Origin: Macrostomum lignano
Lineage: Eukaryota
Direction: 5' to 3'
Assembly (NCBI GenBank): GCA_002269645.1
Contig: NIVC01000036.1
Location: 310,001 to 374,000 of the forward strand
Length of the DNA: 64,000 bases
Position 1 is the first letter of the stretch. Each line of letters opens with the position of its first letter. The notes below the pieces were generated by a model. It did no database searches and was not told where the DNA came from. It saw only the letters and a list, made by a program, of their open reading frames with translations. The translations under genes were made by a program, and so were the position numbers. Below, piece after piece: positions 16,880-61,037 of this stretch.

Positions 16880-19800
16880 GAGGGATTAGAATGGATTGCT
16901 AATCTATTCAGACACAATATGGATGAAGCATTAGAGAGGATTGCTAATCTATTGAGACACAATATAGATGAAGGACTAGAGAGGACTGCTAATCTATTGA
17001 GACACAATATGGATGAAGGATTAGAGAGGACTGCTAATCTATTGAGACACAATATGGATGAAGGATTAGAGTGGATTGCTAATCTATTGAGACACAATAT
17101 GGATGAAGGATTAGAATGGATTGCTAATCTATTGATTCACAATATGGATGAAGGATTAGAGTGGATTGCTAATCTATTGAGGCACAATATGGATGAAGGA
17201 TTAGAATGGATTGCTAATCTATTGAGACACAATATGGGTGAAGGATTAGAGTGGATTGCTAATCTAATGACACACAATATGGATGAAGCATTAGAGTGGA
17301 TTGCTAATCTATTGAGACACAATATGGATGAAGCATTAGAGTGGATTGCTAATCTATTGAGACACAATATGGATGAAGCATTAGAGTGGATTGCTAATCT
17401 ATTGAGACACAATATGGATGAAGGATTAGAGTGGATTGCTAATCTAATGACACACAATATGGATGAAGCATTAGAGTGGATTGCTAATCTATTGATTCAC
17501 AATATGGATGAAGGATTAGAGTGGATTGCTAATCTAATGACACACAATATGGATGAAGCATTAGAGTGGATTGCTAATCTATTGAGACACAATATGGATG
17601 AAGCATTAGAGTGGATTGCTAATCTATTGAGACACAATATGGATGAAGGATTAGAGTGGATTGCTAATCTAATGACACACAATATGGATGAAGCATTAGA
17701 GTGGATTGCTAATCTATTGAGACACAATATGGCTGAGGGATAAGAGTGGATTGCTAATCTATTGATTCACAATATGGATGAAGGATTAGAGTGGATTGCT
17801 AATCTACTGAGGCACAATATGGATGAAGGATTAGAATGGATTGCTAATCTATTGAGTCACAATATGGATGAAGGATTAGAGTGGATTGCTAATCTATTGA
17901 GACACAATATGGATGAAGGATTAGAGTGGATTGCTAATCTACTGAGGCACAATATGGATGAAGGATTAGAGTGGATTGCTAATCTATTGAGACTCAATAT
18001 GGATGAAGGATTAGAGTGGATTGCTAATCTATTGAGACACAATATGGATGAAGGATTAGAGTGGATTGCTAATCTATTGAGACTCAATATGGATGAAGGA
18101 TTAGAGTGGATTGCTAATCTATTGAGACACAATATGGATGAAGGATTAGAGTGGATTGCTAATCGATTGAGTCACAATATGGATGAAGGATTAGAGTGGA
18201 TTGCTAATCTATTGAGACACAATATGGATGAAGGATTAGAGTGGATTGCTAATCTACTGAGGCACAATATGGATGAAGGATTAGAGAGGATTGCTAATCT
18301 ATTGAGACTCAATATGGATGAAGGATTAGAGTGGATTGCTAATCTATTGAGACACAATATGGATGAAGGATTAGAATCGATTGTTAATCTACTGAGACAC
18401 AATATGGATGAAGGATTAGAATGGATTGCTAATATATTGACACACAATATGGATGAAGGATTAGAATGGATTGCTAATCTATTGACACACAATATGGATG
18501 AAGGATTAGAATGGATTGCTAATATATTGAGGCAAAATATGGATGAAGGATTAGAATGGATTGCTAATCTACTGAGACACAATATGGATGAAGGATTAGA
18601 ATGGATTGCTAATATATTGAGACACAATATGGATGAAGGATTAGAATGGATTGCTAATCTATTGAGACACAATATGGATGAAGGATTAGAGTGGATTGCT
18701 AATCTATTGAGACACAATATGGCTGAGGGATAAGAGTGGATTGCTAATCTATTGATTCACAATATGGATGAAGGATTAGAGTGGATTGCTAATCTATTGA
18801 TTCACAATATGGATGAAGGATTAGAGTGGATTGCTAATCTATTGAGATACAATATAGATGAAGGATTAGAGTGGATTGTTAATCTATTGAGACACAATAT
18901 GGATGAGGGATTAGAGTGGATTGCTAATCTATTGAGATACAATATGGATGAAGGATTAGAGTGGATTGCTAATCTATTGAGACACAATATGGATGAAGGA
19001 TTAGAATGGATTGCTAATCTATTGAGACACAATATGGATGAAGGATTAGAGTGGATTGCTAATCTATTGAAACACAAGATGGATGAAGGATTAGAGTGGA
19101 TTGCTAATCTATTGAGACACAATATGGCTGAGGGATAAGAGTGGATTGCTAATCTATTGATTCACAATATGGATGAAGGATTAGAGTGGATTGCTAATCT
19201 ATTGAGGCACAATATGGATGAAGGATTAGAGTGGATTGCTAATCTATTGAGACACAATATGGGTGAAGGATTAGAGTGGATTGCTAATCTAATGACACAC
19301 AATATGGATGAAGCATTAGAGTGGATTGCTAATCTATTGAGACACAATATGGATGAAGCATTAGAGTGGATTGCTAATCTATTGAGACACAATATGGATG
19401 AAGCATTAGAGTGGATTGCTAATCTATTGAGACACAATATGGATGAAGGATTAGAGTGGATTGCTAATCTAATGACACACAATATGGATGAAGCATTAGA
19501 GTGGATTGCTAATCTATTGATTCACAATATGGATGAAGGATTAGAGTGGATTGCTAATCTAATGACACACAATATGGATGAAGCATTAGAGTGGATTGCT
19601 AATCTATTGAGACACAATATGGATGAAGCATTAGAGTGGATTGCTAATCTATTGAGACACAATATGGATGAAGCATTAGAGTGGATTGCTAATCTATTGA
19701 GACACAATATGGATGAAGCATTAGAGTGGATTGCTAATCTATTGAGACACAATATGGCTGAGGGATAAGAGTGGATTGCTAATCTATTGATTCACAATAT

Positions 19801-20935
19801 GGATGAAGGATTAGAGTGGATTGCTAATCTATTGAGGCACAATATGGATGAAGGATTAGAATGGATTGCTAATCTATTGAGTCACAATATGGATGAAGGA
19901 TTAGAGTGGATTGCTAATCTATTGAGACACAATATGGATGAAGGATTAGAGTGGATTGCTAATCTACTGAGGCACAATATGGATGAAGGATTAGAGAGGA
20001 TTGCTAATCTATTGAGACTCAATATGGATGAAGGATTAGAGTGGATTGCTAATCTATTGAGACACAATATGGATGAGGGATTAGAGTGGATTGCTAATCT
20101 ATTGAGACTCAATATGGATGAAGGATTAGAGTGGATTGCTAATCTATTGAGACACAATATGGATGAAGGATTAGAGTGGATTGCTAATCGATTGAGTCAC
20201 AATATGGATGAAGGATTAGAGTGGATTGCTAATCTATTGAGACACAATATGGATGAAGGATTAGAGTGGATTGCTAATCTACTGAGGCACAATATGGATG
20301 AAGGATTAGAGAGGATTGCTAATCTATTGAGACTCAATATGGATGAAGGATTAGAGTGGATTGCTAATCTATTGAGACACAATATGGATGAAGGATTAGA
20401 ATCGATTGTTAATCTACTGAGACACAATATGGATGAAGGATTAGAATGGATTGCTAATATATTGACACACAATATGGATGAAGGATTAGAATGGATTGCT
20501 AATCTATTGACACACAATATGGATGAAGGATTAGAATGGATTGCTAATATATTGAGGCAAAATATGGATGAAGGATTAGAATGGATTGCTAATCTACTGA
20601 GACACAATATGGATGAAGGGTTAGAATGGATTGCTAATATATTGAGGCAAAATATAGATGAAGGATTAGAATGGATTGCTAATCTACTGAGACACAATAT
20701 GGATGAAGGATTAGAATGGATTGCTAATCTATTGACACACGAATGGATTGCTAATCTATTGACACACAATATGGATGAAGGACTAGAGAGGATTGCTAAT
20801 CTATTGAGACACAATATGGATGAAGGATTAGAGTGGATTGCTAATCTATTGAGACACAATATGGATGAAGGATTAGAGAGGATTGCTTATCTATTGAGAC
20901 ACAATATGGATGAAGGATTAGAGAGGATTGCTAAC
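16880..20935. repeat. 45-bp minisatellite, about 90 copies, with an internal 2025-bp-offset duplication
   Basis: Direct. Identical variant patterns at 17137-17457 and 19162-19482. Confidence 0.98.
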
Positions 20936-21186
20936 TATGAAACTCGAACTAGTTAATACTTTAAAGTACACATTGGAATAGAAATACGAGAGTAATATTC
21001 TTTGACCTTGTCACTTAGGCGAAAATGTACAATAAAGGTTCATGTCGGACTGGCTGATCTACCAACAAAATATTCAGTAGCATGGGTAATTGCATTGTTT
21101 ATCTTACAGAAGTCAAGTAGTCTCAAGTAGTTTTCAAGTAGTCTGGGTTCTTACAGTATTATGCAACAATTATTTTTGCATTCGAT

Positions 21187-31446: not shown

Positions 31447-31460
31447 GTTACCATAGCAAC
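31447..31460. promoter_or_regulatory. Isolated X-box motif GTTACCATAGCAAC
   Basis: Perfect consensus match about 370 bp downstream of the coiled-coil gene stop codon. Confidence 0.35.
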
Positions 31461-31969: not shown

Positions 31970-32875
31970 CTGAAATTGAAGACAAAATGCTTCGTAACTT
32001 TTTTGTTTGTTTGAAATTTAAGATTATTTCAAATTATAAATCTAAGTGTATCATGCCTTGCATTCGAAGTTAAATTATCTTGGTGAAACTATAACAAAAA
32101 GGTTTGAATTAAATATAAATAATTGAATTAATTTTAATAATTTTTTAAAATAATTTTTATATATTTATTAGTTTTTTTCTTTTTTTCTTTTAAATATTTT
32201 TCATTTATTATTATTATTATATATATATATTTAAAATATATTTTAATAATTTTTAATAAAATTTAATCTATAAATTTAATATAAATTTTAAATAAATTTA
32301 ATTAACAATAAAATAAAGTTTTTTATTTACTAAATATATATTAAGTAGAATTCAAATAAATGAAAAAACAAAAGTTCAACTACTGGTTATAACAAAAAAT
32401 TGAAATATTTCGTTATTTACATTTTAAATCAAGCAATCCAATTGCGATTAATATATTGAAGATAGAATTTAACTTTAATTGTAAAATTTTCCCTTGTTTA
32501 CACAATGCCTCCTCAAATATAGTTTCTTTCAAGTTTAACTTCAACATTAACTAATGATTGTTTGAATTATCAGTAATTTTATTTTCATTTTTATTGATTT
32601 TAAAAAAAAAAACAGAATCAAATAAATTATCTATATATTTCTATTATCTTATTTCGTATATATTTTTAACTAAAGCTAGCATGTGATTGTATGCAAATAT
32701 TTTTCAATAATATGACTAATTTATTATCAGTAGCTAAATACTTAATCTAAAAAATCAACATTAAATTGCAAATAAAGTTTGTTTGTACTATTTACTTCAA
32801 GAAAGTTTCCAACTAGCTATAAATTTGAATTTTAACTATCTGAACTGCTCTCTGTCAATAAAGCCGTCAGCTCAC

Positions 32876-33430
32876 CTGGTCACGAAGTCAAGATCGAGTG
32901 GCGGCACCGCCCGGCCCCCGGAGCCCGCAGAGCCGCCACCGTACAGCGCCTCGGCGGACGACTCGCGAAATCTCTGCCTCACCTGAGCCAAAGTTTCCGC
33001 CGGAGCGAAATCGGCTTCAAGTTCTGCGGTGGAATCAGCTGCCGCAGTTGGCGATGCTGGCAGCTTCATCACCGCAGCTTCCTGCTGCAGCCTCATCGCA
33101 GCCTGAGCACGAAGACGCGCTAGGAGGCCTCCGCGACTTGACGAACTCTGCTGCTGCTGCTGCGATATCGGCCCATCAAAATCCTCGTAGCTCCCCTCTT
33201 CCTCAGTGTCGCAACCGGTGTCGAATTCCCCCTGGAAACTGACGCCTTGACGCGTCTTCTCCGACGCAAAAGCCGGGCTCGACGCCGACTTCTCCGCGCC
33301 GTCAGTATCGTCAAAAATAGACCGACCTCGCTGCTGCCGACCAGCGCCACTGGCCGGGTTGCTGAGCGCGGGCAGGCGGGCTAAGAAGTTTCGAACTCGC
33401 TCAGAGATCTCCCGGTCTTCCTGGCGCTGA

Positions 33431-33462
<32 letters not shown>

Positions 33463-33567
33463 AGTGGGCGGAGGCGGAGACGCCGCTGTCAGCTGCTCCT
33501 TCCTGGGCGACACGACCAGCAGAAGTTCGTCTTGCTGTGGCTTCTTCTGTTGCTGCCACCACTGCCG

Positions 33568-33613
<46 letters not shown>

Positions 33614-34102
33614 GGCTGCCACCACTGCTGCTGCGGCTGTTGCTGCTGCGGCTGTTGCTGCTGCGGCTGCCACCACCGCTGCTGACTTTTTGCCGACGTT
33701 TCGCCGACAATCGGTGAGCTGCTTGTAGACGACGGTGCGACTCGTTTGAACAGCAAATTGCCGCGACTGTTTGGTGGCAGCCGCTCCTCCAGCACGTAGC
33801 CACCGGCGCTCAAGGTGCCGCTCGACTTCCAGACGTCGCCTCCGCCATCGAAGTCGTTGGCGGGATCGTCCAGAACGCGCGGCTCATCCAGTCGTTTTAA
33901 GGCGGCCTCGGCGGCGTCGATGACTGCCCGATGCTCGGCGTTCCTGGCCACCGAGCTGACGGCTGCTGGCGCTGACGGTGGCGCCGCCACCGCCGGTGCG
34001 TTCGAGTTGCAGCGTTGGAGCCGCTGGACTTCGGCTTCCAGGCGGCGAAGCTGCTGTTTGAGAGCCTCTTGCTCCATGAGCTGGGCACTGTCCTGCTGAG
34101 CT
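32876..34102 (-). CDS. Coiled-coil gene, exon 4 (1227 nt; coiled coil, poly-Gln, poly-Pro)
   Basis: Acceptor catcgcag|A and donor AG|GTGAGC, phase 2 to 2. Corresponds to the 413-aa ORF 32872-34113. Confidence 0.75.
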
Positions 34103-37105: not shown

Positions 37106-38998
37106 TTAATTTCGAATTTTTGAATATCGATCCGCCGGAGGGCTGCTGGCGTCGGTTGACTTGCCCTCGACGGTGGAGCAATCGGCCCCGTCTCGGCAGA
37201 CTCCTCCGTCGGCTCCAGTTAGCACGGATGAGCCTTCCGTGTCGCTGACGTAGTGCTCCATCCCGATGTAGTAGTTCGGCTGCAGCAGCAGTGGCGCCGC
37301 GCTGATCGCTACCAGATCCCTCGGCTGGAACGCCGCTTTCCACTTGCCGTTCGGGTGCCGGTCGAACATCACCGGCAAATATTCGTCAACTGCAATCAAT
37401 CGGCTCAATGGTTTTTGAGCGACGAGTTTCTCGGCACCTCGCTTAGTGAGGGCGTAGCCGAGGGTCCAGTAGGTGTAGGCAGGATATGTGAGAAACTCCG
37501 AGCCAGGTACCGCCTTCTCGTCCTCTGAGTACATGATCTTCCGTCCGAGGTACAGCAGCTCCCAGTCCGACTGCAGGCGATCTGCCTCCCTCACAGTTGC
37601 CAAGAGGCGCTCCTCAAAGTTCGGACCGAACCGGCCGTCGTCTTCCAGGACGAGAACTCGATTTAGCGTCGGATCGTTTGCCAGAGCCTGCCAGACAGCG
37701 TGATGGCTGAGGAAGCAGCCGACTTCGCCCATGGTGAGTCCCCGACCGTGGAAGGGGTCCGCGTACCCGTCCAAGGACTTGATCCCGTTTCGCTGCAGCC
37801 AGCTCGAGTTCAACCGGCGGCCGTCGACAGCTTCCAGATGCTTCCAGTCGAGTCCCAGCAGTGTCAGTGCGTACCGCATTCTTTCCAGACGATCTGGCCG
37901 CCTCGACAAATTGATGACGAATATCAGGTCGAAGCCCAGCTTCCTCGGAGGCCTTGATGGAGCAGCGTAATTGGCCAACGAAGCGACGGGTTGCCAGGAC
38001 TCGAGGCCGGCACGGTGATAGTGAAACTCCATCAGGGCGTGCTTGAACGCTCCAGCCTCCAGGTCGAGAACTGGCAGACTCTTGTCAGACAGCAAGCGCC
38101 TGTCGTCGAAGGTGGCGTAGACGCCAAACTGCAGACTGTTGTCCAGCACAGGCTGGATGCCCGCAGCTGCGGCAGCCCAGTGCATCAAAGGCAAGTCGTC
38201 AATGGGCCACTCGATCGGGTAGTTGCTGGGCATCGGATCGAACTTAAATCCGGAGCCAGCGCTGTCATCGTTCTGCAACGACAGCAAAAATGCCGAATGA
38301 ACAACGGCCACCGGGAAGATGCCGACGCGCCTTCGCCTCTGGATGTCAAGGTAGGTGTCAGATCGAAGGTAATAGCCAGTCTCGCGGTCGATGTCGCCCC
38401 AGAAGTTGGCACCAAAGCTCGCATCCGTGCTGCAGTTGAGCAGGGGAGCCAGCAAGCTCAAGTCCCTGCTGGTCAGGTGACGAAGCGTGTCGGGATGAGT
38501 GATCAACACGTCGGCGTCCAGGTAAAACACAAACTTTGAACCGTAGACTCGAGCCGACTCCAAGGCTAGCTGTCTAAGTCTCAGCACGTGACGAAAGCGC
38601 TCCTCGGTCCAGTCCAAGCCTTGAGTCTCTTCTTCGCCATCGAATTTTAGTGGAGACTCGCTTGCTCGGATTTCAATTCGCGCGTACCGTTGCAGATTGG
38701 CTCGCTGCCAGGTGTGCAGCAGTTGCAGACTCCTGTCTCTGCTGTGATCAACGAAGAATATCATAGACAGCCGGCTTGAGTTGTAGTTCTGCCGCTCGAT
38801 TCCAGCCAGCGAGTAGGGCAGAGCAAAGGCTTTGTTCCGGACCAGCACAGCAATGGTGACGTCCGGGTCTGGTGAACCGTCGGATTCGAATGAGTCATCG
38901 GAATGGCAGAGGCCAGGTGCAAATAGCAATACCAATAATATCGCTTGCAGCAGAATCATAGCAAACAAGTGAAGAAGACTGTTTTGAACAATAGGCAT
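37106..38998 (-). CDS. COLGALT1: Procollagen galactosyltransferase (COLGALT1/2, GT25 family), intronless, about 630 aa, nested in intron 2 of the coiled-coil gene
   Basis: Signal peptide after MPIVQ (alternative Met at 38959). Family motifs VTIAVLVRN, YLDADVL, NFWG, AVVHSAFL, FVINLSRRPDR, LTMGEVGCFLSH, VLEDD, WELLYLGRK, YTYWTLGY, SDTE. Confidence 0.93.
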   Translation of the reverse strand: MPIVQNSLLHLFAMILLQAILLVLLFAPGLCHSDDSFESDGSPDPDVTIAVLVRNKAFALPYSLAGIERQNYNSSRLSMIFFVDHSRDRSLQLLHTWQRANLQRYARIEIRASESPLKFDGEEETQGLDWTEERFRHVLRLRQLALESARVYGSKFVFYLDADVLITHPDTLRHLTSRDLSLLAPLLNCSTDASFGANFWGDIDRETGYYLRSDTYLDIQRRRRVGIFPVAVVHSAFLLSLQNDDSAGSGFKFDPMPSNYPIEWPIDDLPLMHWAAAAAGIQPVLDNSLQFGVYATFDDRRLLSDKSLPVLDLEAGAFKHALMEFHYHRAGLESWQPVASLANYAAPSRPPRKLGFDLIFVINLSRRPDRLERMRYALTLLGLDWKHLEAVDGRRLNSSWLQRNGIKSLDGYADPFHGRGLTMGEVGCFLSHHAVWQALANDPTLNRVLVLEDDGRFGPNFEERLLATVREADRLQSDWELLYLGRKIMYSEDEKAVPGSEFLTYPAYTYWTLGYALTKRGAEKLVAQKPLSRLIAVDEYLPVMFDRHPNGKWKAAFQPRDLVAISAAPLLLQPNYYIGMEHYVSDTEGSSVLTGADGGVCRDGADCSTVEGKSTDASSPPADRYSKIRN

Positions 38999-40047: not shown

Positions 40048-40530
40048 AGCATTAGTGAGCTGTTGGCACTCGCTTCTCAACTCGTGCTCTGCCGACTCTC
40101 GCATCTCCCTCTCCCTCTCGCGTTCCCTTTCTCGCTCCTTCTCTCGATCTCGCAGCTCTCGAACCCACTGCACGGCAGCGGCCAAGTTCGAAGGCGGCGG
40201 CGGTGGGGGCGGCGGCGCGAACATCCTCGGAGCGACAGGCGGCAGCGGTGGTGGCGGAGGAGGCGGCGGTGGCTTCAGATCTCCAAGGCCTAGTCTTCTA
40301 CTAGGAGCAGAAGACTTCAATGGCAGGCAAGGCTCCGAGGCGGCTGCAGCGACAGCTCTGTCAGATAAATCTGAGTCCTCTTCGTTGTCGGAAAAGGAGT
40401 TGACCGCCCTGGCCGAGTTGCTTTTTCGCTGTCGGTGCTGCTGTCGAAGGTAGCGCCTCCGGTGCGGACCCTGCTGGCTCCAGCCGACTCGAAGCAGCTC
40501 GTCTGTTCCGTCCGAATTTGGGGATTCGGC
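40048..40530 (-). CDS. Coiled-coil gene, exon 2 (161 codons; poly-Pro, start of coiled coil)
   Basis: Acceptor tttacgcag|GCC and donor GCT|GTGAGT. Open frame, phase 0 to 0. Confidence 0.75.
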
Positions 40531-40599
40531 CTGCGTAAATTATGTTAATTAGATTGGTTAATTTTCAGGGTTTGCTTGATTGGGCATTGTTCATGCGGA

Positions 40600-42080: not shown

Positions 42081-42129
42081 ACACCCCATTCGCCATAAAT
42101 TCTCACTTCCTGAATCGCCTCAAACTCAC

Positions 42130-43212
42130 CCTTTCTCCGCCTGACTCTTTTTGCTCTTCTTTTGCAGACTCGCCTCCACCAGCACCACCGTCTTGACGCC
42201 GACGAAGCGACCTGCTCTGTCGATCTTGTCCGGGCGCGTCGCTCTCATGAAATTGCGACTTCGTGGAGCGAAATACCGGACGGCGGGATTGGGCAGAGTC
42301 GGCAGCAGGTGAGTTCTTGGACCGACTCGGCACCGATTCAGCAAAAGTTGTCGTCTTTGTCGTAGCGCGAGTTACCAGACTGGAGGCGCTAGGCAGCGGC
42401 ATTGTTGACGCCGTTGTCGACTGCTGCGTTTCCATGGTAACGATAGGTCGCGCGATCGGTTTTGTTGATCGATTTTCCGTTACCATAGAAACCAAAGGTC
42501 GCGATGAAGCTGATGATTTAGTCTCCAAGGCAGCTGGAAGTCTCGGTGGGGTTGATGAAGTTGTCGTCTCCATGACAACCGGCGATCGAGGCGTTGTTGA
42601 CGATGTCTTGGTCTCCATGACAACCGGCGATTGAGGCGTTTTTGACGATGTCTTCGTCTCCATGACAACCGGCGATTGAGGAGTTGCTGACGACGTCTTC
42701 GTCTCCATGACAACCGGCGATTGAGGAGTTGCTGACGACGTCTTCGTCTCCATGACAACCGGAGGTCTAGATGAAATACCGTTGTTAGTTTCTATGGCAA
42801 CTGCTGGCCTACTGGCAGACGATGACGTAACCTGACTCAGCAGCTCTCGCTTCAGACGCTCCCTCTCCTCTTTTAAAGCGGTAACATTATTGCTATCAGT
42901 CTTTGTAACACCTGCTGTGCCACCTACAGCGGTAGTGGTAGGAACAGGAGTCTGTCTTTTATTGGCTTCATCTTTTTCGCTCCGCCTTGCCAGCATCAGC
43001 TGCTCCGGATCGGGAAACGCCTGCCGAATATTGTCACCTGGCGGCATCTGTTTGATCTGCACCGACTGCGCATCGGAGCTGGCGGACTCTGCAGTGATCT
43101 GCTGCTGATTTTGCTTCGAAAGGTTTGTTGTTGCTGCTGTTAAAGACTTGCTTTGCTTTCTACGGTGTTGCAGAAACGAGTCCGGATCTGGCAGGCTAGC
43201 TTTGGTTGCCAT
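42130..43212 (-). CDS. Coiled-coil/low-complexity gene, exon 1 (361 codons, Ser/Thr-rich, five 15-aa repeats); a short upstream exon is possible
   Basis: ATG at 43212. Donor AGG|GTGAGT at 42130/42129, phase 0. A possible upstream exon MSANPT|GTGAGA near 43330-43350 could join in frame via ctgaag|AAA TTT. Confidence 0.7.
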
Positions 43213-43219
43213 AGGCAAC
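42428..43219. promoter_or_regulatory. Cluster of RFX X-box motifs inside coding exon 1 of the coiled-coil gene
   Basis: Eight matches to GTHNYY-AT-RRNAAC at 42428, 42479, 42566, 42611, 42656, 42701, 42746 and 42788. GTTGCC-ATA-GGCAAC at 43205-43219 overlaps the start codon. Function is inferred. Confidence 0.6.
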
Positions 43220-43599
43220 GAACGGGGTTGAAATTTCTTCAGAAACCAGTTTTGTAATCACGTGCGGTCGCTTGTGCCTTAAACTGGCCATTCTTATTTG
43301 AGTTAATATTTATACAACTGGCTCTCACTGTTGGATTGGCTGACATGGCTGCTGCAGATGTCAGTTGATTGTGCAAGACAGTTTGCCAAAAGCTGCACGG
43401 ACATATTTCTTTTGCGGGCTGCCTTTAGAATAGCGGCTCTGTGATTAGCGGATATTCAGCCAGCTTCACTTTGCCGAAAATTCACAACTCTAAAAGTGTC
43501 ACACTTCCGAACATTCACAACTCTAAATAATTCACAGCTCTAAATAAAAGCTTCAAATTGCCAAACATTCACAAACCCCAAAAGCTTCACACGGCCGAA

Positions 43600-46591: not shown

Positions 46592-46774
46592 CTGTTGAAT
46601 AAGTTAAATGATGAAAAAGTAAACGTCATTTTTCTGCATTATACTACTGAAAGTAGGCTAGTTGCCAACACTGACAAGATGCACAGAAATACTGCAGCGT
46701 GTACGGGGGTTAAATAGATTGGCCGGGTCACTTTAGGGCACGGAGGGTTATAAGGGTCATCTAAAGACACGTAT

Positions 46775-47715
46775 GGACATTCGGGAGCACTCAAGGACAC
46801 AGGGGTATCGGGGTCACTTAAGGACACAGGGGTATCGGGGGCACTTAAGGACACAGGGGTATCGGGGTAACTTAAGGACACAGGGGTATCGGGGGCACTT
46901 AAGGACACAGGGGTATCGGGGTCGCTTAAGGACACGTAGAGGTATCGGGGGCACTTAAGGACACAGGGGTATCGGGTCACTTAAGGACACAGGGGTATCG
47001 GGGTAACTTAAGGACACATGGGGTATCGGGGTCACTTAAGGACACGTAGAGGAATCGGAGTCACTTAAGGACACAGGGGTATCGTGGGCACTTAAGGACA
47101 CGTAGAGGAATCGGAGTCACTTAAGGACACAGGGGTATCGTGGGCACTTAAGGACACAGGGGTATCGGGGTAACTTAAGGACACAGGGGTATCGGGGTAA
47201 CTTAAGGACACAGGGGTATCGGGGGCACTTAAGGACACAGGGGTATCGGGGTAACTTAAGGACACGTAGGGGTTATCGGGGTCGCTAAAGGACACGTAGA
47301 GGTATCGGGGTCACTTAAGGACACAGGGGTATCGGGGTAACTTAAGGACACATGGGGTATCGGGGTCACTTAAGGACACGTAGAGGAATCGGAGTCACTT
47401 AAGGACACAGGGGTATCGTGGGCACTTAAGGACACGTAGAGGAATCGGAGTCACTTAAGGACACAGGGGTATCGTGGGCACTTAAGGACACAGGGGTATC
47501 GGGGTAACTTAAGGACACAGGGGTATCGGGGTAACTTAAGGACACAGGGGTATCGGGGGCACTTAAGGACACAGGGGTATCGGGGTAACTTAAGGACACG
47601 TAGGGGTTATCGGGGTCGCTAAAGGACACGTAGAGGTATCGGGGTCACTTAAGGACACAGGGGTATCGGGGTAACTTAAGGACACGTAGGGGTATCAAGG
47701 TCGCTTAAGGACACT
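46775..47715. repeat. About 25-bp minisatellite CACTTAAGGACACAGGGGTATCGGG with an internal 334-bp duplication (MANSC intron 3)
   Basis: Direct. Identical ORF translations at 47092-47295 and 47426-47629. Confidence 0.95.
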
Positions 47716-48153
47716 GAAAACAAAACCCCAGTGACTACTCACAAGTAGAGAAGCAGGTAGTGAATTTATAATTCATTAAAATTACGGTGGGACAGCAAAA
47801 ATTGTCTAAAAAAGTCAAAAGTTCATAAATAATTTCAATCTCAATCACCGTCACAATCTTAACTAAAAATTATTGCATTTACAGGGTTAAAATTCCTTTG
47901 TTATCATGCTAATAGTCTTCGATAAACAGTCAGAAAAAATATAATTTGGGTATAAAAAATTTGGTTTGCGATCATGGAATACGCTGGACTTCAATGAACC
48001 AAACTTAAATAATGAAATACTTATATAATATACTATCAAATTAGCTTTCAATCATAATGAGTTTGCTTTAATGTCAAACCAATTAACTAAATAGTTATTG
48101 TGATGCATTGCAACTAGGATAATTTATTGTGTTAACAAAAACGATAGCTTTAC

Positions 48154-49002
48154 CATTGTGAGCCTGAGACATTGAAGCCTCGTAGGCTCCTGGGTGCTCA
48201 GTGATTACTGATGTTGATGCACTCTCCTGCTGATGTGGCTTTGAATCTGCGCCTGCAGTGCTAGCTGGAGGGCTAAGGGTAGTGCTAGCTGGAGGGCTAA
48301 GGGTGGTGCTAGCTGGAGGGCTAACGGTAGTGCTAGCTGGAAGGCTAATGGGAGTGCTAGCTGGAGGGCTAACGGTAGTGCTAGCTGGAGGGCTAACGGT
48401 AGTGCTAGCTGGAGGGCTAAGGGTAGTGCTAGCTGGAGGGCTAACGGTAGTGCTAGCTGGAGGGCTAACGGTAGTGCTAGCTGGAGGGCTAACGGTACTG
48501 CTAGCTGGAGGGCTAACGGTAGTGCTAGCTGGAGGGCTAATGGGAGTGCTAGCTGGAGGGCTAACGGTAGTGCTAGCAGGAGGGCTAAGGGTAGTGCTAG
48601 CTGGAGGGCTAAGGGCGGTGCTAGCTGGAGAGCTAAGGGTGGTGCTAGCTGGAGGGCTAAGGGTAGTGCTAGCTGGAGGGCTAACGGTAGTGCTAGCTGG
48701 AGAGCTAAGGGTGGTGCTAGCTGGAGGGCTAAGGGTGGTGCTAGCTGGAGAGCTAAGGGTGGTGCTAGCTGGAGGGCTAAGGGTAGTGCTAGCTGGAGGG
48801 CTAAGGGTAGTGCTAGCTGGAGGGCTAAGGGCGGTGCTAGCTGGAGAGCTAATGGTAGTGCTAGCTGGAGGGCTAAGGGTGGTGCTAGTTGGAGAGCTAG
48901 CGGCAGTGCTAGCACTCTGGCTGACGGCAGATTCACCATCAACACTCCTAACACTAATTGGCAGGCCCATTTCCGATGGCCTTTCTGTGCTGATCGAAAT
49001 CG
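48154..49002 (-). CDS. MANSC-domain protein, exon 3 (mucin-like Ser/Thr/Pro stalk built from a 24-bp coding repeat, STTLSPPA)
   Basis: Acceptor ttttgccag| and donor G|GTAAAG, 849 nt, phase 1 to 1, open frame. Confidence 0.72.
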
Positions 49003-49159
49003 CTGGCAAAAAATTGAGTTGGAAGGCACAAAAATGCTAATTAATTAAATCTGTTTCAAAGCAGGTGGGCGAGATAAATAAGGAATGAAGCATGTCGAAA
49101 AGAAAAATGATTTGTTATCGTAATTAATTACTAGATAATTGCCACATTTCGTCTGACCT

Positions 49160-54675: not shown

Positions 54676-55496
54676 TCAATCGCCAGCAGTTTGCCTATAG
54701 AAATCCCTGGCGGCCCGTTTCGCGTACTTGGCAACCAGCGATTCGGTGACGTCACTGGCTGGCCAGCACCGACGCAAGCTGTTGCCAACCGCCCTGGACC
54801 AATAGGAGTCGGTCCGTGTCGAGTAACTTTCGACACTTTCCCCGGCAACTACGGGCGGCGGCGGCGGCGTCGCCTCGTGCCCGTCGTCAGCTTCTGTCGC
54901 TTCTTCCTTGTCTTCATCCTCAGCCTCCTCCTCTCCGGCATCCTCATCGGAGCTCTCCGACTCGTCGCTTTGATAGCCAGCAGCCGCAGTTGGTGGCAGA
55001 ATCATGCTCCAGCCTTGGCTCAGGTGCTTCAACTCTAACGACTGCAAATCGTCCAGAATTCGAGACCGCTCTCCGACACCCGCTGCCGCCTGCTGCTCAT
55101 CATCACCTTCGTAGATGCCGCCGTACAGGTAGAGCCGATCGTCAAGCACTGCTAGACCGGCGTTGATTCTCTCTAACGGCAGGATGCTGGCTGCAGAGAC
55201 TGCAGCACCACCAGCAGCGATATCATTGCTGCCGAAGTCAATCAGTCGCCAACGCTGCTTGACCAAATCCAGCTGGTAGAGCTCGTTGAACATCACCCCG
55301 GTCAGGCCGTCGTCAGCCTGTTCAATGTCGAACACACCGCCAAAGGTGTACGCTCGGCCGGTGGATGGATTGACTGCACCAGTGACGCCGCACCGGGGTG
55401 TGGGACGCTGACCGGAGAATTTCACCGGTTGCCAGGCAAACTGTTGGAGCTGGTCGTCTGTTGCTGCGGCGGAGGCGGCTGCTGCTGAAGATCTTC
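54676..55496 (-). CDS. KLHDC4: KLHDC4, exon 3 (kelch repeats, acidic tract, DUF4110-like C-terminus); about 571 aa total
   Basis: Acceptor ttttattacag|GA. PTPRCG, FGGVFD, FNELY and LYLYGGIYE motifs. Terminal PVVAGESVESYSTRTDSYW. TGA ends at 54676. Confidence 0.9.
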
Positions 55497-60583: not shown

Positions 60584-61037
60584 TGTGCACCAAGCCCTTC
60601 TCGCCGCGTTTCTCAGTCCGCTTAGCGTAGCCGCCAACCAAGCAGATGCCGGAGTCGTCAGGCAGGGGAAACAGCAGGCAGGCAGACCGAGGACTGGGCT
60701 GCGAGCCAGTGGTTCGAATCTCAGTCCAGACTCGAGTATCCAAATCAAACGACCACAGATCGTTGAAATAGCGAAACGTGCGGCCGTTGTCATGGAAACC
60801 GCCAAATACTAGGAGACGAACATGGGGCCGTTTCAGGGCCAGCATTCGGTGACCGCTGCGAGGACAGGGGGCCGGGCTGCCCGAGGCCGGGGTCACTTTG
60901 CGCCACTGACGCGACTTTACGGTCCAAGACCAGATATCATCGTAGTGATGGAACTGCGACTCGGTTGGAGTGGCGAACTCGCCTCCGAATACGAACAAAT
61001 GATCGCCTGAGCCTGAGGGCGGCTTGGCCATGGTCGC
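60557..61037 (-). CDS. KLHDC4: KLHDC4, exon 2
   Basis: Acceptor tccacag|GCG. LFVFGGEFATPTESQFHHYDDIW, RSGHRM, FGGFHD, YFNDLW and GGYAK motifs. Donor G|GTGAGT, phase 1. Confidence 0.92.

What the first reader, a model, noticed from the sequence alone, without database searches (positions are those of the whole stretch)
42428..43219. Exon-embedded, repeat-amplified RFX X-box cluster: a candidate dual-coding ciliary enhancer
Seen: eight exact matches to the X-box consensus GTHNYY-AT-RRNAAC lie within 374 bp of coding exon 1. They are GTTTCCATGGTAAC (42428), GTTACCATAGAAAC (42479), GTCTCCATGACAAC five times at 45-bp spacing (42566-42759) and GTTTCTATGGCAAC (42788). A palindromic GTTGCC-ATA-GGCAAC (43205) overlaps the ATG. 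The recurring peptides VVMET, VTMET, VSMVT and VAIET are these DNA motifs read in frame. My rough estimate under equal base frequencies is about 3e-6 per position, or well under one chance hit per 64 kb. Three of the eight sites and the ATG site are outside the tandem repeat. Known: X-boxes are bound by RFX/DAF-19 factors that control ciliary genes. Inferred: this unnamed coiled-coil protein is ciliary or basal-body associated, and its disordered N-terminus is shaped partly by selection on the DNA. A coding VNTR would then tune RFX site number, possibly also affecting the nested COLGALT gene about 3.4 kb away.
Basis: partly seen in the sequence, partly recalled or inferred. Interest (0 to 1): 0.8.

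Follow-up and report, generated by a model that had tools for sequence, protein, structure and literature searches.

The report
RFX X-box cluster in coding repeat
Eight textbook RFX-binding (X-box) sequences do sit inside the first exon of an orphan gene, but all are copies of one repeated peptide-coding unit, so they are one event amplified; a separate perfect X-box across the start codon makes the gene a fair candidate RFX target, while selection on the DNA rather than the peptide is unproven.

Summary
Eight exact matches to GTHNYYATRRNAAC lie at 42428-42801, against about 0.25 strand-matches expected in the whole window. A perfect GTTGCC-ATA-GGCAAC palindrome spans the ATG. Three of the 14-mers are identical to experimentally validated C. 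elegans X-boxes (xbx-1, dyf-5, xbx-5).

The eight sites are not independent. They are the conserved core (V-x-M/I-x-T) of nine in-frame repeat units, R-P-x-V-x-M-E-T..., of which 4.4 units are a young 45-bp minisatellite. Half of this window is minisatellite.

Codon-shuffle controls do not explain the motif count (P 5e-5 to 8.5e-4), but they ignore shared descent. A descent-aware simulation shows the core is constrained relative to its flanks. The window cannot show whether that constraint acts on DNA or on the peptide. One unit (AALET) keeps the peptide and has lost the X-box, and an Arg codon outside the motif shows protein-level constraint.

None of the exon sites meets the stricter GTNRCC(N0-3)RGYAAC consensus. 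The ATG site does.

The protein has no detectable homologues, so "ciliary" is unsupported.

Best reading: a candidate RFX target through its start-codon X-box, with incidental or auxiliary exon sites multiplied by repeat expansion. Interest is moderate to low.

The parts
43205..43219 (.). Perfect palindromic X-box GTTGCC-ATA-GGCAAC with a 3-nt spacer, spanning the start codon (ATG = 43212-43210 on the minus strand)
   Evidence: Only match in the window (expected 0.02). Half-site score is 18.8 bits, above the best of 30 validated C. elegans sites at 18.7. It has the same half-sites and spacer length as the validated nph-1 X-box GTTGCCAGGGGCAAC. It meets GTNRCC N0-3 RGYAAC on both strands.
43307..43314 (-). 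TATAAATA box about 100 nt upstream of the ATG. CCAAT lies at 43339-43335 and CACGTG at 43264-43259.
   Evidence: Read directly from the sequence. Promoter function is inferred.
42130..43212 (-). Putative coding exon 1: 361 codons, phase 0, donor AAAGG|GTGAGT. It encodes a disordered protein region that is 37% Ser/Thr/Pro.
   Evidence: ORF 42103..43218. The donor and an in-phase join to exon 2 are. Codon-usage support is weak and absent in the repeat part.
42397..42810 (-). Nine in-frame repeat units R-P-x-[VA]-x-[MIL]-[EV]-T-..., spaced 42/45/45/45/45/45/42/51 nt apart
   Evidence: Every spacing between successive units is a multiple of 3. Core pairwise difference is 0.24-0.26, against 0.46 and 0.60 in the flanks.
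42564..42762 (-). Young 45-bp coding minisatellite (4.4 copies, 94% matches) carrying five identical X-box matches GTCTCCATGACAAC
   Evidence: The 14-mer is identical to the validated C. elegans xbx-5 X-box.
42428..42441 (.). X-box match GTTTCCATGGTAAC (both strands) = peptide VTMET
   Evidence: Identical to the validated xbx-1 X-box. PWM score 20.7 bits.
42479..42492 (.). X-box match GTTACCATAGAAAC (both strands) = peptide VSMVT
   Evidence: Identical to the validated dyf-5 X-box. PWM score 17.9 bits.
42521..42534 (-). Degenerate unit AALET (GTCTCCAAGGCAGC on the + strand). The peptide is conservatively kept and the X-box is lost.
   Evidence: 13.1 bits, below threshold. Two changes hit invariant X-box positions.
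42788..42801 (.). X-box match GTTTCTATGGCAAC (both strands) = peptide VAIET
   Evidence: 20.0 bits.
40048..40530 (-). Putative exon 2: 161 codons, acceptor ...acgcag|GCC, donor GCT|GTGAGT. Pro-rich followed by a charged coiled-coil-like segment.
   Evidence: The gene model is inferred; there is no RNA evidence.
32875..34095 (-). Possible last exon (phase-0 acceptor ctcag|CAG). If it is used, the COLGALT-like ORF (38998-37106, same strand) lies in the intron.
   Evidence: Unverified.

Best explanation
Exon 1 of an orphan, disordered, Ser/Thr/Pro-rich protein gene on the minus strand contains nine in-frame repeat units, R-P-x-V-x-M-E-T-(S/T-rich tail). The conserved five-residue core V-x-M/I-x-T is spelled GTT-NYY-ATR-RNN-AC. 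That spelling is the nematode-type X-box consensus, whose centre CCATGG necessarily reads Met in this frame. One founder unit carried this 14-mer. Old duplications and then a young 45-bp minisatellite, in a genome region that is half minisatellite, multiplied it to eight matching copies. The number of sites is therefore a product of repeat expansion. The persistence of the core is at least partly due to constraint on the peptide. Separately, a perfect two-half-site X-box lies across the start codon, about 60-80 nt downstream of the transcription start predicted from the TATA box. This makes the gene a credible direct RFX target. The exon copies are sequence-competent RFX sites. They are spaced 42-51 bp apart, so all could be occupied at once. 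They lie about +0.4 to +0.8 kb from the ATG, so they may act as incidental or auxiliary landing sites. Nothing shows that they were selected for that role or that they shape the protein. Shown: the motifs, the repeat anatomy, the statistics, and identity to validated sites. Inferred: the promoter, RFX binding and the gene model.
For: All eight sites fall in register in nine units of one repeat, with spacings in multiples of 3. The tandem array has 4.4 copies at 94% matches. Forty arrays cover 50.7% of the window. The Arg codon two codons upstream of the motif switches AGR/CGA while staying Arg, and Arg-Pro is kept in the old units. This shows protein-level constraint outside the X-box. Unit AALET keeps a conservative peptide (V>A, M>L) but loses the X-box at two invariant positions. 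The three synonymous positions inside the core have mean pairwise difference about 0.33, against about 0.5 for four synonymous positions at conserved flank residues, which is no clear difference (hand count). None of the eight exon sites meets GTNRCC N0-3 RGYAAC, and the five tandem copies have no canonical GTTRCY half-site (consensus). The ATG site is independent: different frame, 3-nt spacer, no flank similarity to the repeat units. It is unique in the window (expected 0.02), has the top score, and lies about 100 nt downstream of TATAAATA. RFX motifs concentrate near transcription starts. Identical 14-mers are DAF-19-dependent sites in C. elegans, and RFX DNA-contacting residues are near-invariant across animals and fungi.
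Against: Codon-level controls say the spelling is unusual for these peptides. With one tandem unit kept, 4 sites are observed against 0.55-0.88 expected (P = 5e-5 to 8.5e-4). The motif relies on minority codons: GTT 20%, ATA 9%, GTA 10%. Within the four X-box-bearing lineages most core changes alter the amino acid, including a non-conservative E>V, yet stay inside the X-box degeneracy, which is what DNA-level constraint predicts. If the core diverged like the flanks (d about 0.3), keeping the motif in 4 of 5 lineages has P about 2e-5, so some constraint on exactly these 14 nt exists. Codon usage in the repeat part gives no support for the coding frame. There are no expression, occupancy or orthologue data of any kind.
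Confidence: 0.5

Rival explanations
1. One reading: the exon sites are a selected, RFX-bound intragenic enhancer (dual coding). Selection on the DNA shapes the repeated peptide, and minisatellite copy number tunes RFX dose.
For: Codon-shuffle controls fail to explain the count. The core 14-mer is about twice as conserved as the flanks, and neutral retention is improbable. All variation among X-box-bearing units stays within variants seen in validated sites, and each scores 17.9-20.7 bits against a validated median of 18.2. The excess is specific to the 2-nt spacer: 12 hits against 0.73 expected, with spacers 0, 1 and 4 within about three times expectation at 0-2 hits each. A second, independent X-box sits at the ATG. 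Multiple X-boxes are known to cooperate in C. elegans. Human X-boxes are found downstream of the TSS, with a robust window to +500 and a permissive window to +1400.
Against: The shuffle null ignores common descent. Synonymous positions in the core are not demonstrably slower than other synonymous positions. Unit AALET lost the motif while keeping the peptide. Arg-Pro outside the motif is conserved at the protein level. The five tandem copies are weak by the GTTRCY half-site criterion. Among true array copies the lack of core variation is not significant: 0 of 14 variable columns against 6 of 31, P about 0.09 (hand count). There are no population or orthologue data.
Confidence: 0.2
2. Pure coincidence. 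Neither the exon sites nor the ATG palindrome is used by RFX. A peptide repeat and an M-A-T N-terminus happen to spell X-boxes, and the reader noticed them because CCATGG-centred palindromes stand out.
For: The consensus is degenerate. Any V-x-M-x-T peptide has roughly a 10-20% chance of spelling it. There is a look-elsewhere effect over many known motifs. Other hits in the window sit in apparently irrelevant places, for example 60786 inside a kelch exon reading GFHDNG. The protein has no link to cilia.
Against: Two independent strong X-boxes (the repeat founder and the ATG site) within 0.8 kb at the 5' end of one gene are jointly improbable. The ATG site alone is expected 0.02 times per 64 kb. 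PWM hits number 10 against 0.05 expected.
Confidence: 0.25
3. The repeat part is not coding. The real coding sequence is shorter or elsewhere, and the array is a non-coding promoter-proximal or intronic X-box cluster.
For: Codon-usage log-likelihood of 42427-42809 does not favour the proposed frame (-0.23, against -0.04 for another frame). There is no homologue to confirm the protein. Tandem repeats keep several frames open.
Against: A single frame stays open for 361 codons from an ATG to a GTGAGT donor and continues in phase through a 161-codon second exon. All length differences between units are multiples of 3. The non-repeat parts of exon 1 and exon 2 favour this frame.
Confidence: 0.05

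Closest known systems
C. elegans DAF-19/RFX X-box promoter motifs (xbx-1, dyf-5, xbx-5, nph-1; Table 1 of PMC3245922)
   Same: Sequence identity. The site at 42428 equals the xbx-1 site, 42479 equals the dyf-5 site, and the five tandem copies equal the xbx-5 site. The ATG site has the half-sites and 3-nt spacer of the nph-1 site.
   Different: The nematode sites lie 60-285 bp upstream of the ATG (one at -767), usually one per gene and in non-coding DNA. Here eight lie 412-785 bp inside the coding sequence and one lies across the ATG. The organism is not a nematode; it is probably a flatworm. No RFX dependence has been shown.
Genes with multiple X-boxes that fine-tune expression (F25B4.2; PMC3245922)
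   Same: More than one X-box per gene. A proximal site plus more distant sites could cooperate.
   Different: The known cases have 2-3 upstream, non-coding sites that arose separately. Here there are nine sites, eight of which are copies of one repeat unit inside an exon.
RFX sites downstream of the TSS in human targets (PMC5838959)
   Same: X-box hits are enriched from -500 to +500 and, more permissively, to +1400 around the TSS. The ATG site lies in the robust window. The exon cluster lies around its downstream edge and otherwise within the permissive window.
   Different: That study gives a positional statistic for single sites. It does not describe repeat-amplified coding arrays.
Exonic transcription-factor sites ('duons') and exonic enhancers (own knowledge; not checked in the library)
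   Same: The same bases would specify amino acids and a TF site.
   Different: Those were defined by occupancy data. Here there is sequence only, and the claimed codon constraint cannot be separated from shared descent.
Coding minisatellites / Ser-Thr-Pro-rich tandem repeats (own knowledge)
   Same: The 45-bp unit is a whole number of codons, the copies are highly similar, the older units at the edges are degenerate, and the region is 49% S+T+P.
   Different: There is no signal peptide, so this is not a secreted mucin. The conserved hydrophobic core V-x-M-E-T is unusual for a simple spacer repeat.

Membership tests
RFX X-box (functional RFX/DAF-19 binding site) | 13-15 bp imperfect palindrome matching GTHNYY-AT-RRNAAC (nematode consensus) | tested here: met
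   Eight exact matches in exon 1. PWM scores are 17.9-20.7 bits, against a validated median of 18.2.
RFX X-box (functional RFX/DAF-19 binding site) | Two GTTRCY-type half-sites, i.e. GTNRCC N0-3 RGYAAC (the general animal/fungal consensus) | tested here: not met
   None of the eight exon sites matches. In this gene only 43205 (the ATG site) does, and elsewhere in the window 31447 and 12374 do. The three older exon sites each have one canonical half-site and the tandem copies have none.
RFX X-box (functional RFX/DAF-19 binding site) | Position close to the transcription or translation start | tested here: inconclusive
   The ATG site meets this: it lies about 100 nt downstream of the TATA box. 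The exon sites lie 412-785 nt downstream of the ATG. That is outside the nematode range and lies around the downstream edge of the human robust window, inside the permissive one. The TSS was not mapped.
RFX X-box (functional RFX/DAF-19 binding site) | RFX occupancy, or expression dependent on RFX or on the motif | not testable with these tools
   There are no ChIP, ATAC or expression data. The organism is unidentified and the presence of an RFX gene was not checked.
RFX X-box (functional RFX/DAF-19 binding site) | Conservation of the motif in orthologues | not testable with these tools
   No homologue of exon 1 or exon 2 was found in 5.8 billion or 1.84 billion protein sets. A metagenome DNA scan found nothing.
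Ciliary / basal-body gene | Homology to a known ciliary protein or domain | tested here: not met
   No Pfam family. No homologues for exon 1, exons 1+2 or the 413-aa ORF. PDB hits are poly-Q/poly-P only.
Coding minisatellite (VNTR) | Head-to-tail copies whose unit is a multiple of 3 and keeps the frame open | tested here: met
   45-bp unit, 4.4 copies, 94% matches. In frame within a 361-codon exon.
Coding minisatellite (VNTR) | Copy-number variation between individuals | not testable with these tools
   Only a single sequence is available.
Dual-use codons / exonic enhancer | Reduced synonymous change at the TF site relative to other synonymous sites | tested here: inconclusive
   Three core synonymous sites against four flank synonymous sites give mean pairwise difference about 0.33 against 0.5 (hand count). 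Shuffle P-values are inflated by shared descent.

The most novel reading that the evidence does not exclude
The exon array is a true RFX-bound homotypic enhancer embedded in a coding minisatellite. Purifying selection on the 14-bp X-box, not on the peptide, holds V-x-M-E-T in place. Gain or loss of 45-bp units changes RFX site dose and therefore expression. That would be a natural case in which a coding VNTR is at once a protein repeat and a transcriptional rheostat.
Probability: 0.15. Interest if true: 0.7.

Novelty: new variant of a known kind. Interest (0 to 1): 0.35.

Why it matters
If the exon copies are bound and used, this would be an unusually clean test case for the disputed idea that transcription-factor sites constrain codons. 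The same 14 bases recur eight times with known functional equivalents in C. elegans. Synonymous mutations can separate the two codes, and repeat number offers a natural dose series. If they are incidental, the locus is a useful caution. A peptide repeat in a minisatellite-rich genome can create a statistically overwhelming motif 'cluster' from a single founder event, and codon-shuffle controls do not protect against that error. Either way, the start-codon palindrome nominates an orphan gene as a candidate RFX target in a probable flatworm.

Tried and rejected
1. Homology for gene identity gave nothing. I tried exon 1, exons 1+2 in an exhaustive HMMER search and the 413-aa downstream ORF. The four weak hits are low-complexity repeats. 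One is a clam BEN-domain protein with a similar 15-aa repeat, which I judged convergent.
2. An exact look-up of the COLGALT product found no record. The taxon is inferred only from 42-45% matches to trematode and cestode proteins.
3. A metagenome scan for the repeat unit DNA found nothing. Rfam and tRNA scans of the window were empty.
4. I tested whether the ATG site is another copy of the repeat, since M-A-T-K-A-S resembles M-E-T-K-T-S. I rejected this. Beyond the X-box itself the DNA flanks do not align (1-3 of 10 bases, by eye), Ser uses a different codon family, and the frame and spacer differ.
5. The variation test within the tandem array gave 0 of 14 core columns against 15 of 31 elsewhere (P = 0.0009). 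I down-weighted it because most differences lie in the array's edge units, outside the TRF-defined array. Restricted to true array copies it is 0 of 14 against 6 of 31, P about 0.09.
6. I first concluded by hand that the 413-aa ORF could not be spliced in phase to exon 2. A script showed phase-0 acceptors at 34096 and 34093, so I withdrew that.
7. I considered internal translation starts, because each unit has an ATG in a Kozak-like context (ACCATGG, GTCATGG). I did not pursue this because nothing here can test it.
8. Extra GTTRCY half-sites in exon 1 reach 10 per 1.09 kb against 1.64 per kb in the window. After removing those inside X-boxes and duplicates, 4 remain against about 1.8 expected, which is not significant.

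Full report
**Observation.** GTHNYYATRRNAAC gives 15 strand-matches at 10 sites in the window. One hundred dinucleotide-preserving shuffles gave a mean of 0.25 and a maximum of 2. Eight of the sites lie at 42428-42801, and five of those are identical copies 45 bp apart. Tandem Repeats Finder reports a 45-bp array at 42564-42762 with 4.4 copies and 94% matches. GTTGCCATAGGCAAC at 43205 is the only match to GTTGCC N0-3 GGCAAC in the window, where 0.02 are expected.

**Gene context.** The gene is on the minus strand.
- The ORF 42103..43218 starts with ATG at 43212 (MATKASLPDPDS...).
- A canonical donor, AAAGG|GTGAGT, ends a 361-codon exon at 42130 in phase 0.
- A canonical acceptor at 40531/40530 opens a 161-codon exon that ends at a second GTGAGT donor at 40048/40047.
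- Phase-0 acceptors at 34096 and 34093 would allow a third exon in the frame of the 413-aa ORF.
- That join would place the COLGALT-like ORF inside an intron. This ORF (38998-37106) matches Glyco_transf_25 at 2e-23.
- The nesting is possible but unverified.
- Upstream of the ATG on the minus strand lie CCAAT (43339-43335), TATAAATA (43314-43307) and CACGTG (43264-43259). The palindrome would therefore sit about 60-80 nt downstream of the TSS predicted from the TATA box (inference).
- The COLGALT product is closest to trematode and cestode proteins at 42-45% identity and to a mollusc protein at 39%. The window is therefore probably from a flatworm with no close relative in the databases.
- Forty tandem arrays cover 50.7% of the window.

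**Anatomy of the cluster.** Read in frame, the eight sites are the cores of nine consecutive repeat units:

| Unit | Peptide | Status |
|---|---|---|
| 1 | RPAVAIET... | X-box match at 42788 |
| 2-6 | (R/Q)(P/S)PVVMET... | five X-box matches in the young array |
| 7 | RLPAALET... | X-box lost |
| 8 | RPLVSMVT... | X-box match at 42479 |
| 9 | RPIVTMET... | X-box match at 42428 |

The spacings between units are 42, 45, 45, 45, 45, 45, 42 and 51 nt, all multiples of three. The core codons GTT-NYY-ATR-RNN-AC are the X-box consensus itself. The eight sites trace back to one founder, followed by duplication.

**Are these real X-box sequences?** By the nematode standard, yes.
- Table 1 of Chu et al. 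2011 (PMC3245922) lists validated DAF-19-dependent sites.
- GTTTCCATGGTAAC is the xbx-1 site, GTTACCATAGAAAC is the dyf-5 site and GTCTCCATGACAAC is the xbx-5 site.
- The nph-1 site, GTTGCCAGGGGCAAC, has the half-sites and 3-nt spacer of the ATG palindrome.
- A PWM built from the 30 fourteen-base sites in that table gives 10 hits in the window at or above the 20th percentile of validated scores. First-order Markov simulations expect 0.05.
- A half-site scan shows the excess is specific to the 2-nt spacer: 12 hits against 0.73 expected. Spacers 0, 1 and 4 give 2, 0 and 2 hits against 0.55-0.68 expected.
- The single 3-nt-spacer hit is the ATG site at 18.8 bits, just above the best validated site at 18.7.

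There is a caveat. Under the general consensus GTNRCC N0-3 RGYAAC, with monomer GTTRCY (bioRxiv 10.1101/2022.11.11.515474), none of the eight exon sites qualifies. Only 43205, 31447 and 12374 do. The five tandem copies contain no canonical half-site.

- Keeping the protein and redrawing synonymous codons gives 1.4-2.8 sites on average for the full exon, against 8 observed.
- With only one tandem unit kept, it gives 0.55-0.88 sites against 4 observed (P = 5e-5 to 8.5e-4).
- The motif uses minority codons: GTT 20%, ATA 9%, GTA 10%.
- Codon shuffling therefore does not explain the motif.
- This null treats the units as independent, which they are not. ATA and GTA are single-base derivatives of ATG and GAA, and GTT can simply be inherited from the founder.

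**Descent-aware tests.**
- Among the five old lineages, mean pairwise difference is 0.24-0.26 in the 14-nt core, 0.46 in the 9 nt upstream and 0.60 in the 19 nt downstream.
- If the core drifted at d = 0.3 per lineage, keeping the motif in at least 4 of 5 lineages has P about 2e-5. At d = 0.15 the probability is 0.016. The core is therefore under constraint.
- The level of that constraint cannot be resolved. The three synonymous columns in the core (T/T/T/T/T; C/C/C/T/C; A/G/G/A/A) have mean pairwise difference about 0.33. Four synonymous positions at conserved flank residues have about 0.5. The sample is too small to separate these values (hand count).
- For the peptide: Arg two codons upstream of the motif switches between AGR and CGA while staying Arg. 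Unit AALET keeps a conservative peptide while mutating two invariant X-box positions.
- For the DNA: most core changes alter the amino acid, including E>V, yet remain X-box-legal.
- Within the young array, no core column varies against 15 of 31 elsewhere (P = 0.0009). Most of those differences lie in the edge units, outside the TRF-defined array. Restricted to true array copies the count is 0 of 14 against 6 of 31, P about 0.09 (hand count).

**Gene identity.** Nothing links the protein to cilia.
- There is no Pfam family for exon 1 or the 413-aa ORF. Exon 2 has only a spurious repeat-driven hit.
- A word-indexed search of 5.8 billion proteins found nothing for exon 1 or for the 413-aa ORF.
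- An exhaustive HMMER search of 1.84 billion representatives with exons 1+2 found only four weak low-complexity hits, the best at E = 2e-7.
- RFX factors also regulate non-ciliary genes (PMC3493443).

**Interpretation.** I think the following is most likely (confidence 0.5).
- One founder 14-mer was carried by a peptide repeat and amplified in a minisatellite-prone genome.
- The independent start-codon palindrome makes the gene a credible RFX target. RFX motifs concentrate near transcription starts, and this site is both the strongest X-box in the window and at the 5' end of the same gene.
- The exon copies are sequence-competent, are spaced 42-51 bp apart so that all could be occupied, and lie in a zone where human X-boxes are still enriched. 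They could add RFX occupancy, but selection for that is not shown.

**Novelty and score.** X-boxes, multi-X-box genes, TSS-downstream X-boxes, exonic TF sites and coding minisatellites are each known. I did not find a repeat-amplified X-box array inside a coding exon described in the literature searches I ran. I therefore class it as a new variant of a known kind. Function is untested, so interest is 0.35. The decisive data are orthologues or alleles, RFX occupancy, and synonymous-mutation reporters.

Noticed in passing
window 1-64000: Forty tandem arrays (periods 4-60 bp, up to 86 copies; for example a 45-bp array at 16883-20938) cover 50.7% of the window. Many create long spurious ORFs in several frames.
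   Followed up: partly
window 31447-31460: GTTACCATAGCAAC is a high-scoring X-box (20.2 bits) with two canonical GTTRCY half-sites. It lies in AT-rich non-coding DNA about 1.4 kb downstream of the stop of the 413-aa ORF, with no obvious gene start nearby.
   Followed up: partly
window 60786-60799 and 55428-55441: There are two X-box-type hits inside exons of a kelch-repeat (KLHDC4-like) gene. The reverse complement of 60786 equals the validated C. elegans bbs-9 X-box and reads G-F-H-D-N-G. 55428 is weaker. With 31447 and 46317 this makes 4 spacer-2 hits outside exon 1, against 0.73 expected.
   Followed up: partly
window 37106-38998 (-): A COLGALT-like glycosyltransferase-25 ORF of 630 aa has no intron and an N-terminal hydrophobic segment. 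Its best matches are trematode and cestode proteins at 42-45%, which suggests a flatworm source with no close relative in the databases.
   Followed up: partly
window 43289-43291 (-): An upstream ATG lies 16-18 nt downstream of the TATA box. It opens a short out-of-frame ORF that overlaps the main ATG and ends at about 43199. It may lie upstream of the real TSS.
   Followed up: no
P0015 (Tegillarca granosa KAJ8313903.1): A clam BEN-domain protein carries a 15-aa tandem repeat, QPIVVGETRSSSATD, that resembles PVVMETKTSSATPQS (about 10 of 15 with one gap; E = 6e-4). It has Gly instead of Met, so it has no ATG or X-box centre. The resemblance is probably convergent.
   Followed up: partly
window 48095-49009 (-) and 46639-47629 (-): Long Ser/Thr/Pro-rich repeat ORFs (PPASTTLS and PDTPVSLS units) may be mucin-like exons or simply translated minisatellites.
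   Followed up: no
window 42683, 42728: Each of two tandem units also carries a GTTGCT half-site outside the X-box core. Overall GTTRCY half-site density in exon 1 is 10 per 1.09 kb, against 1.64 per kb in the window. This is not significant once X-boxes and duplicates are removed.
   Followed up: yes
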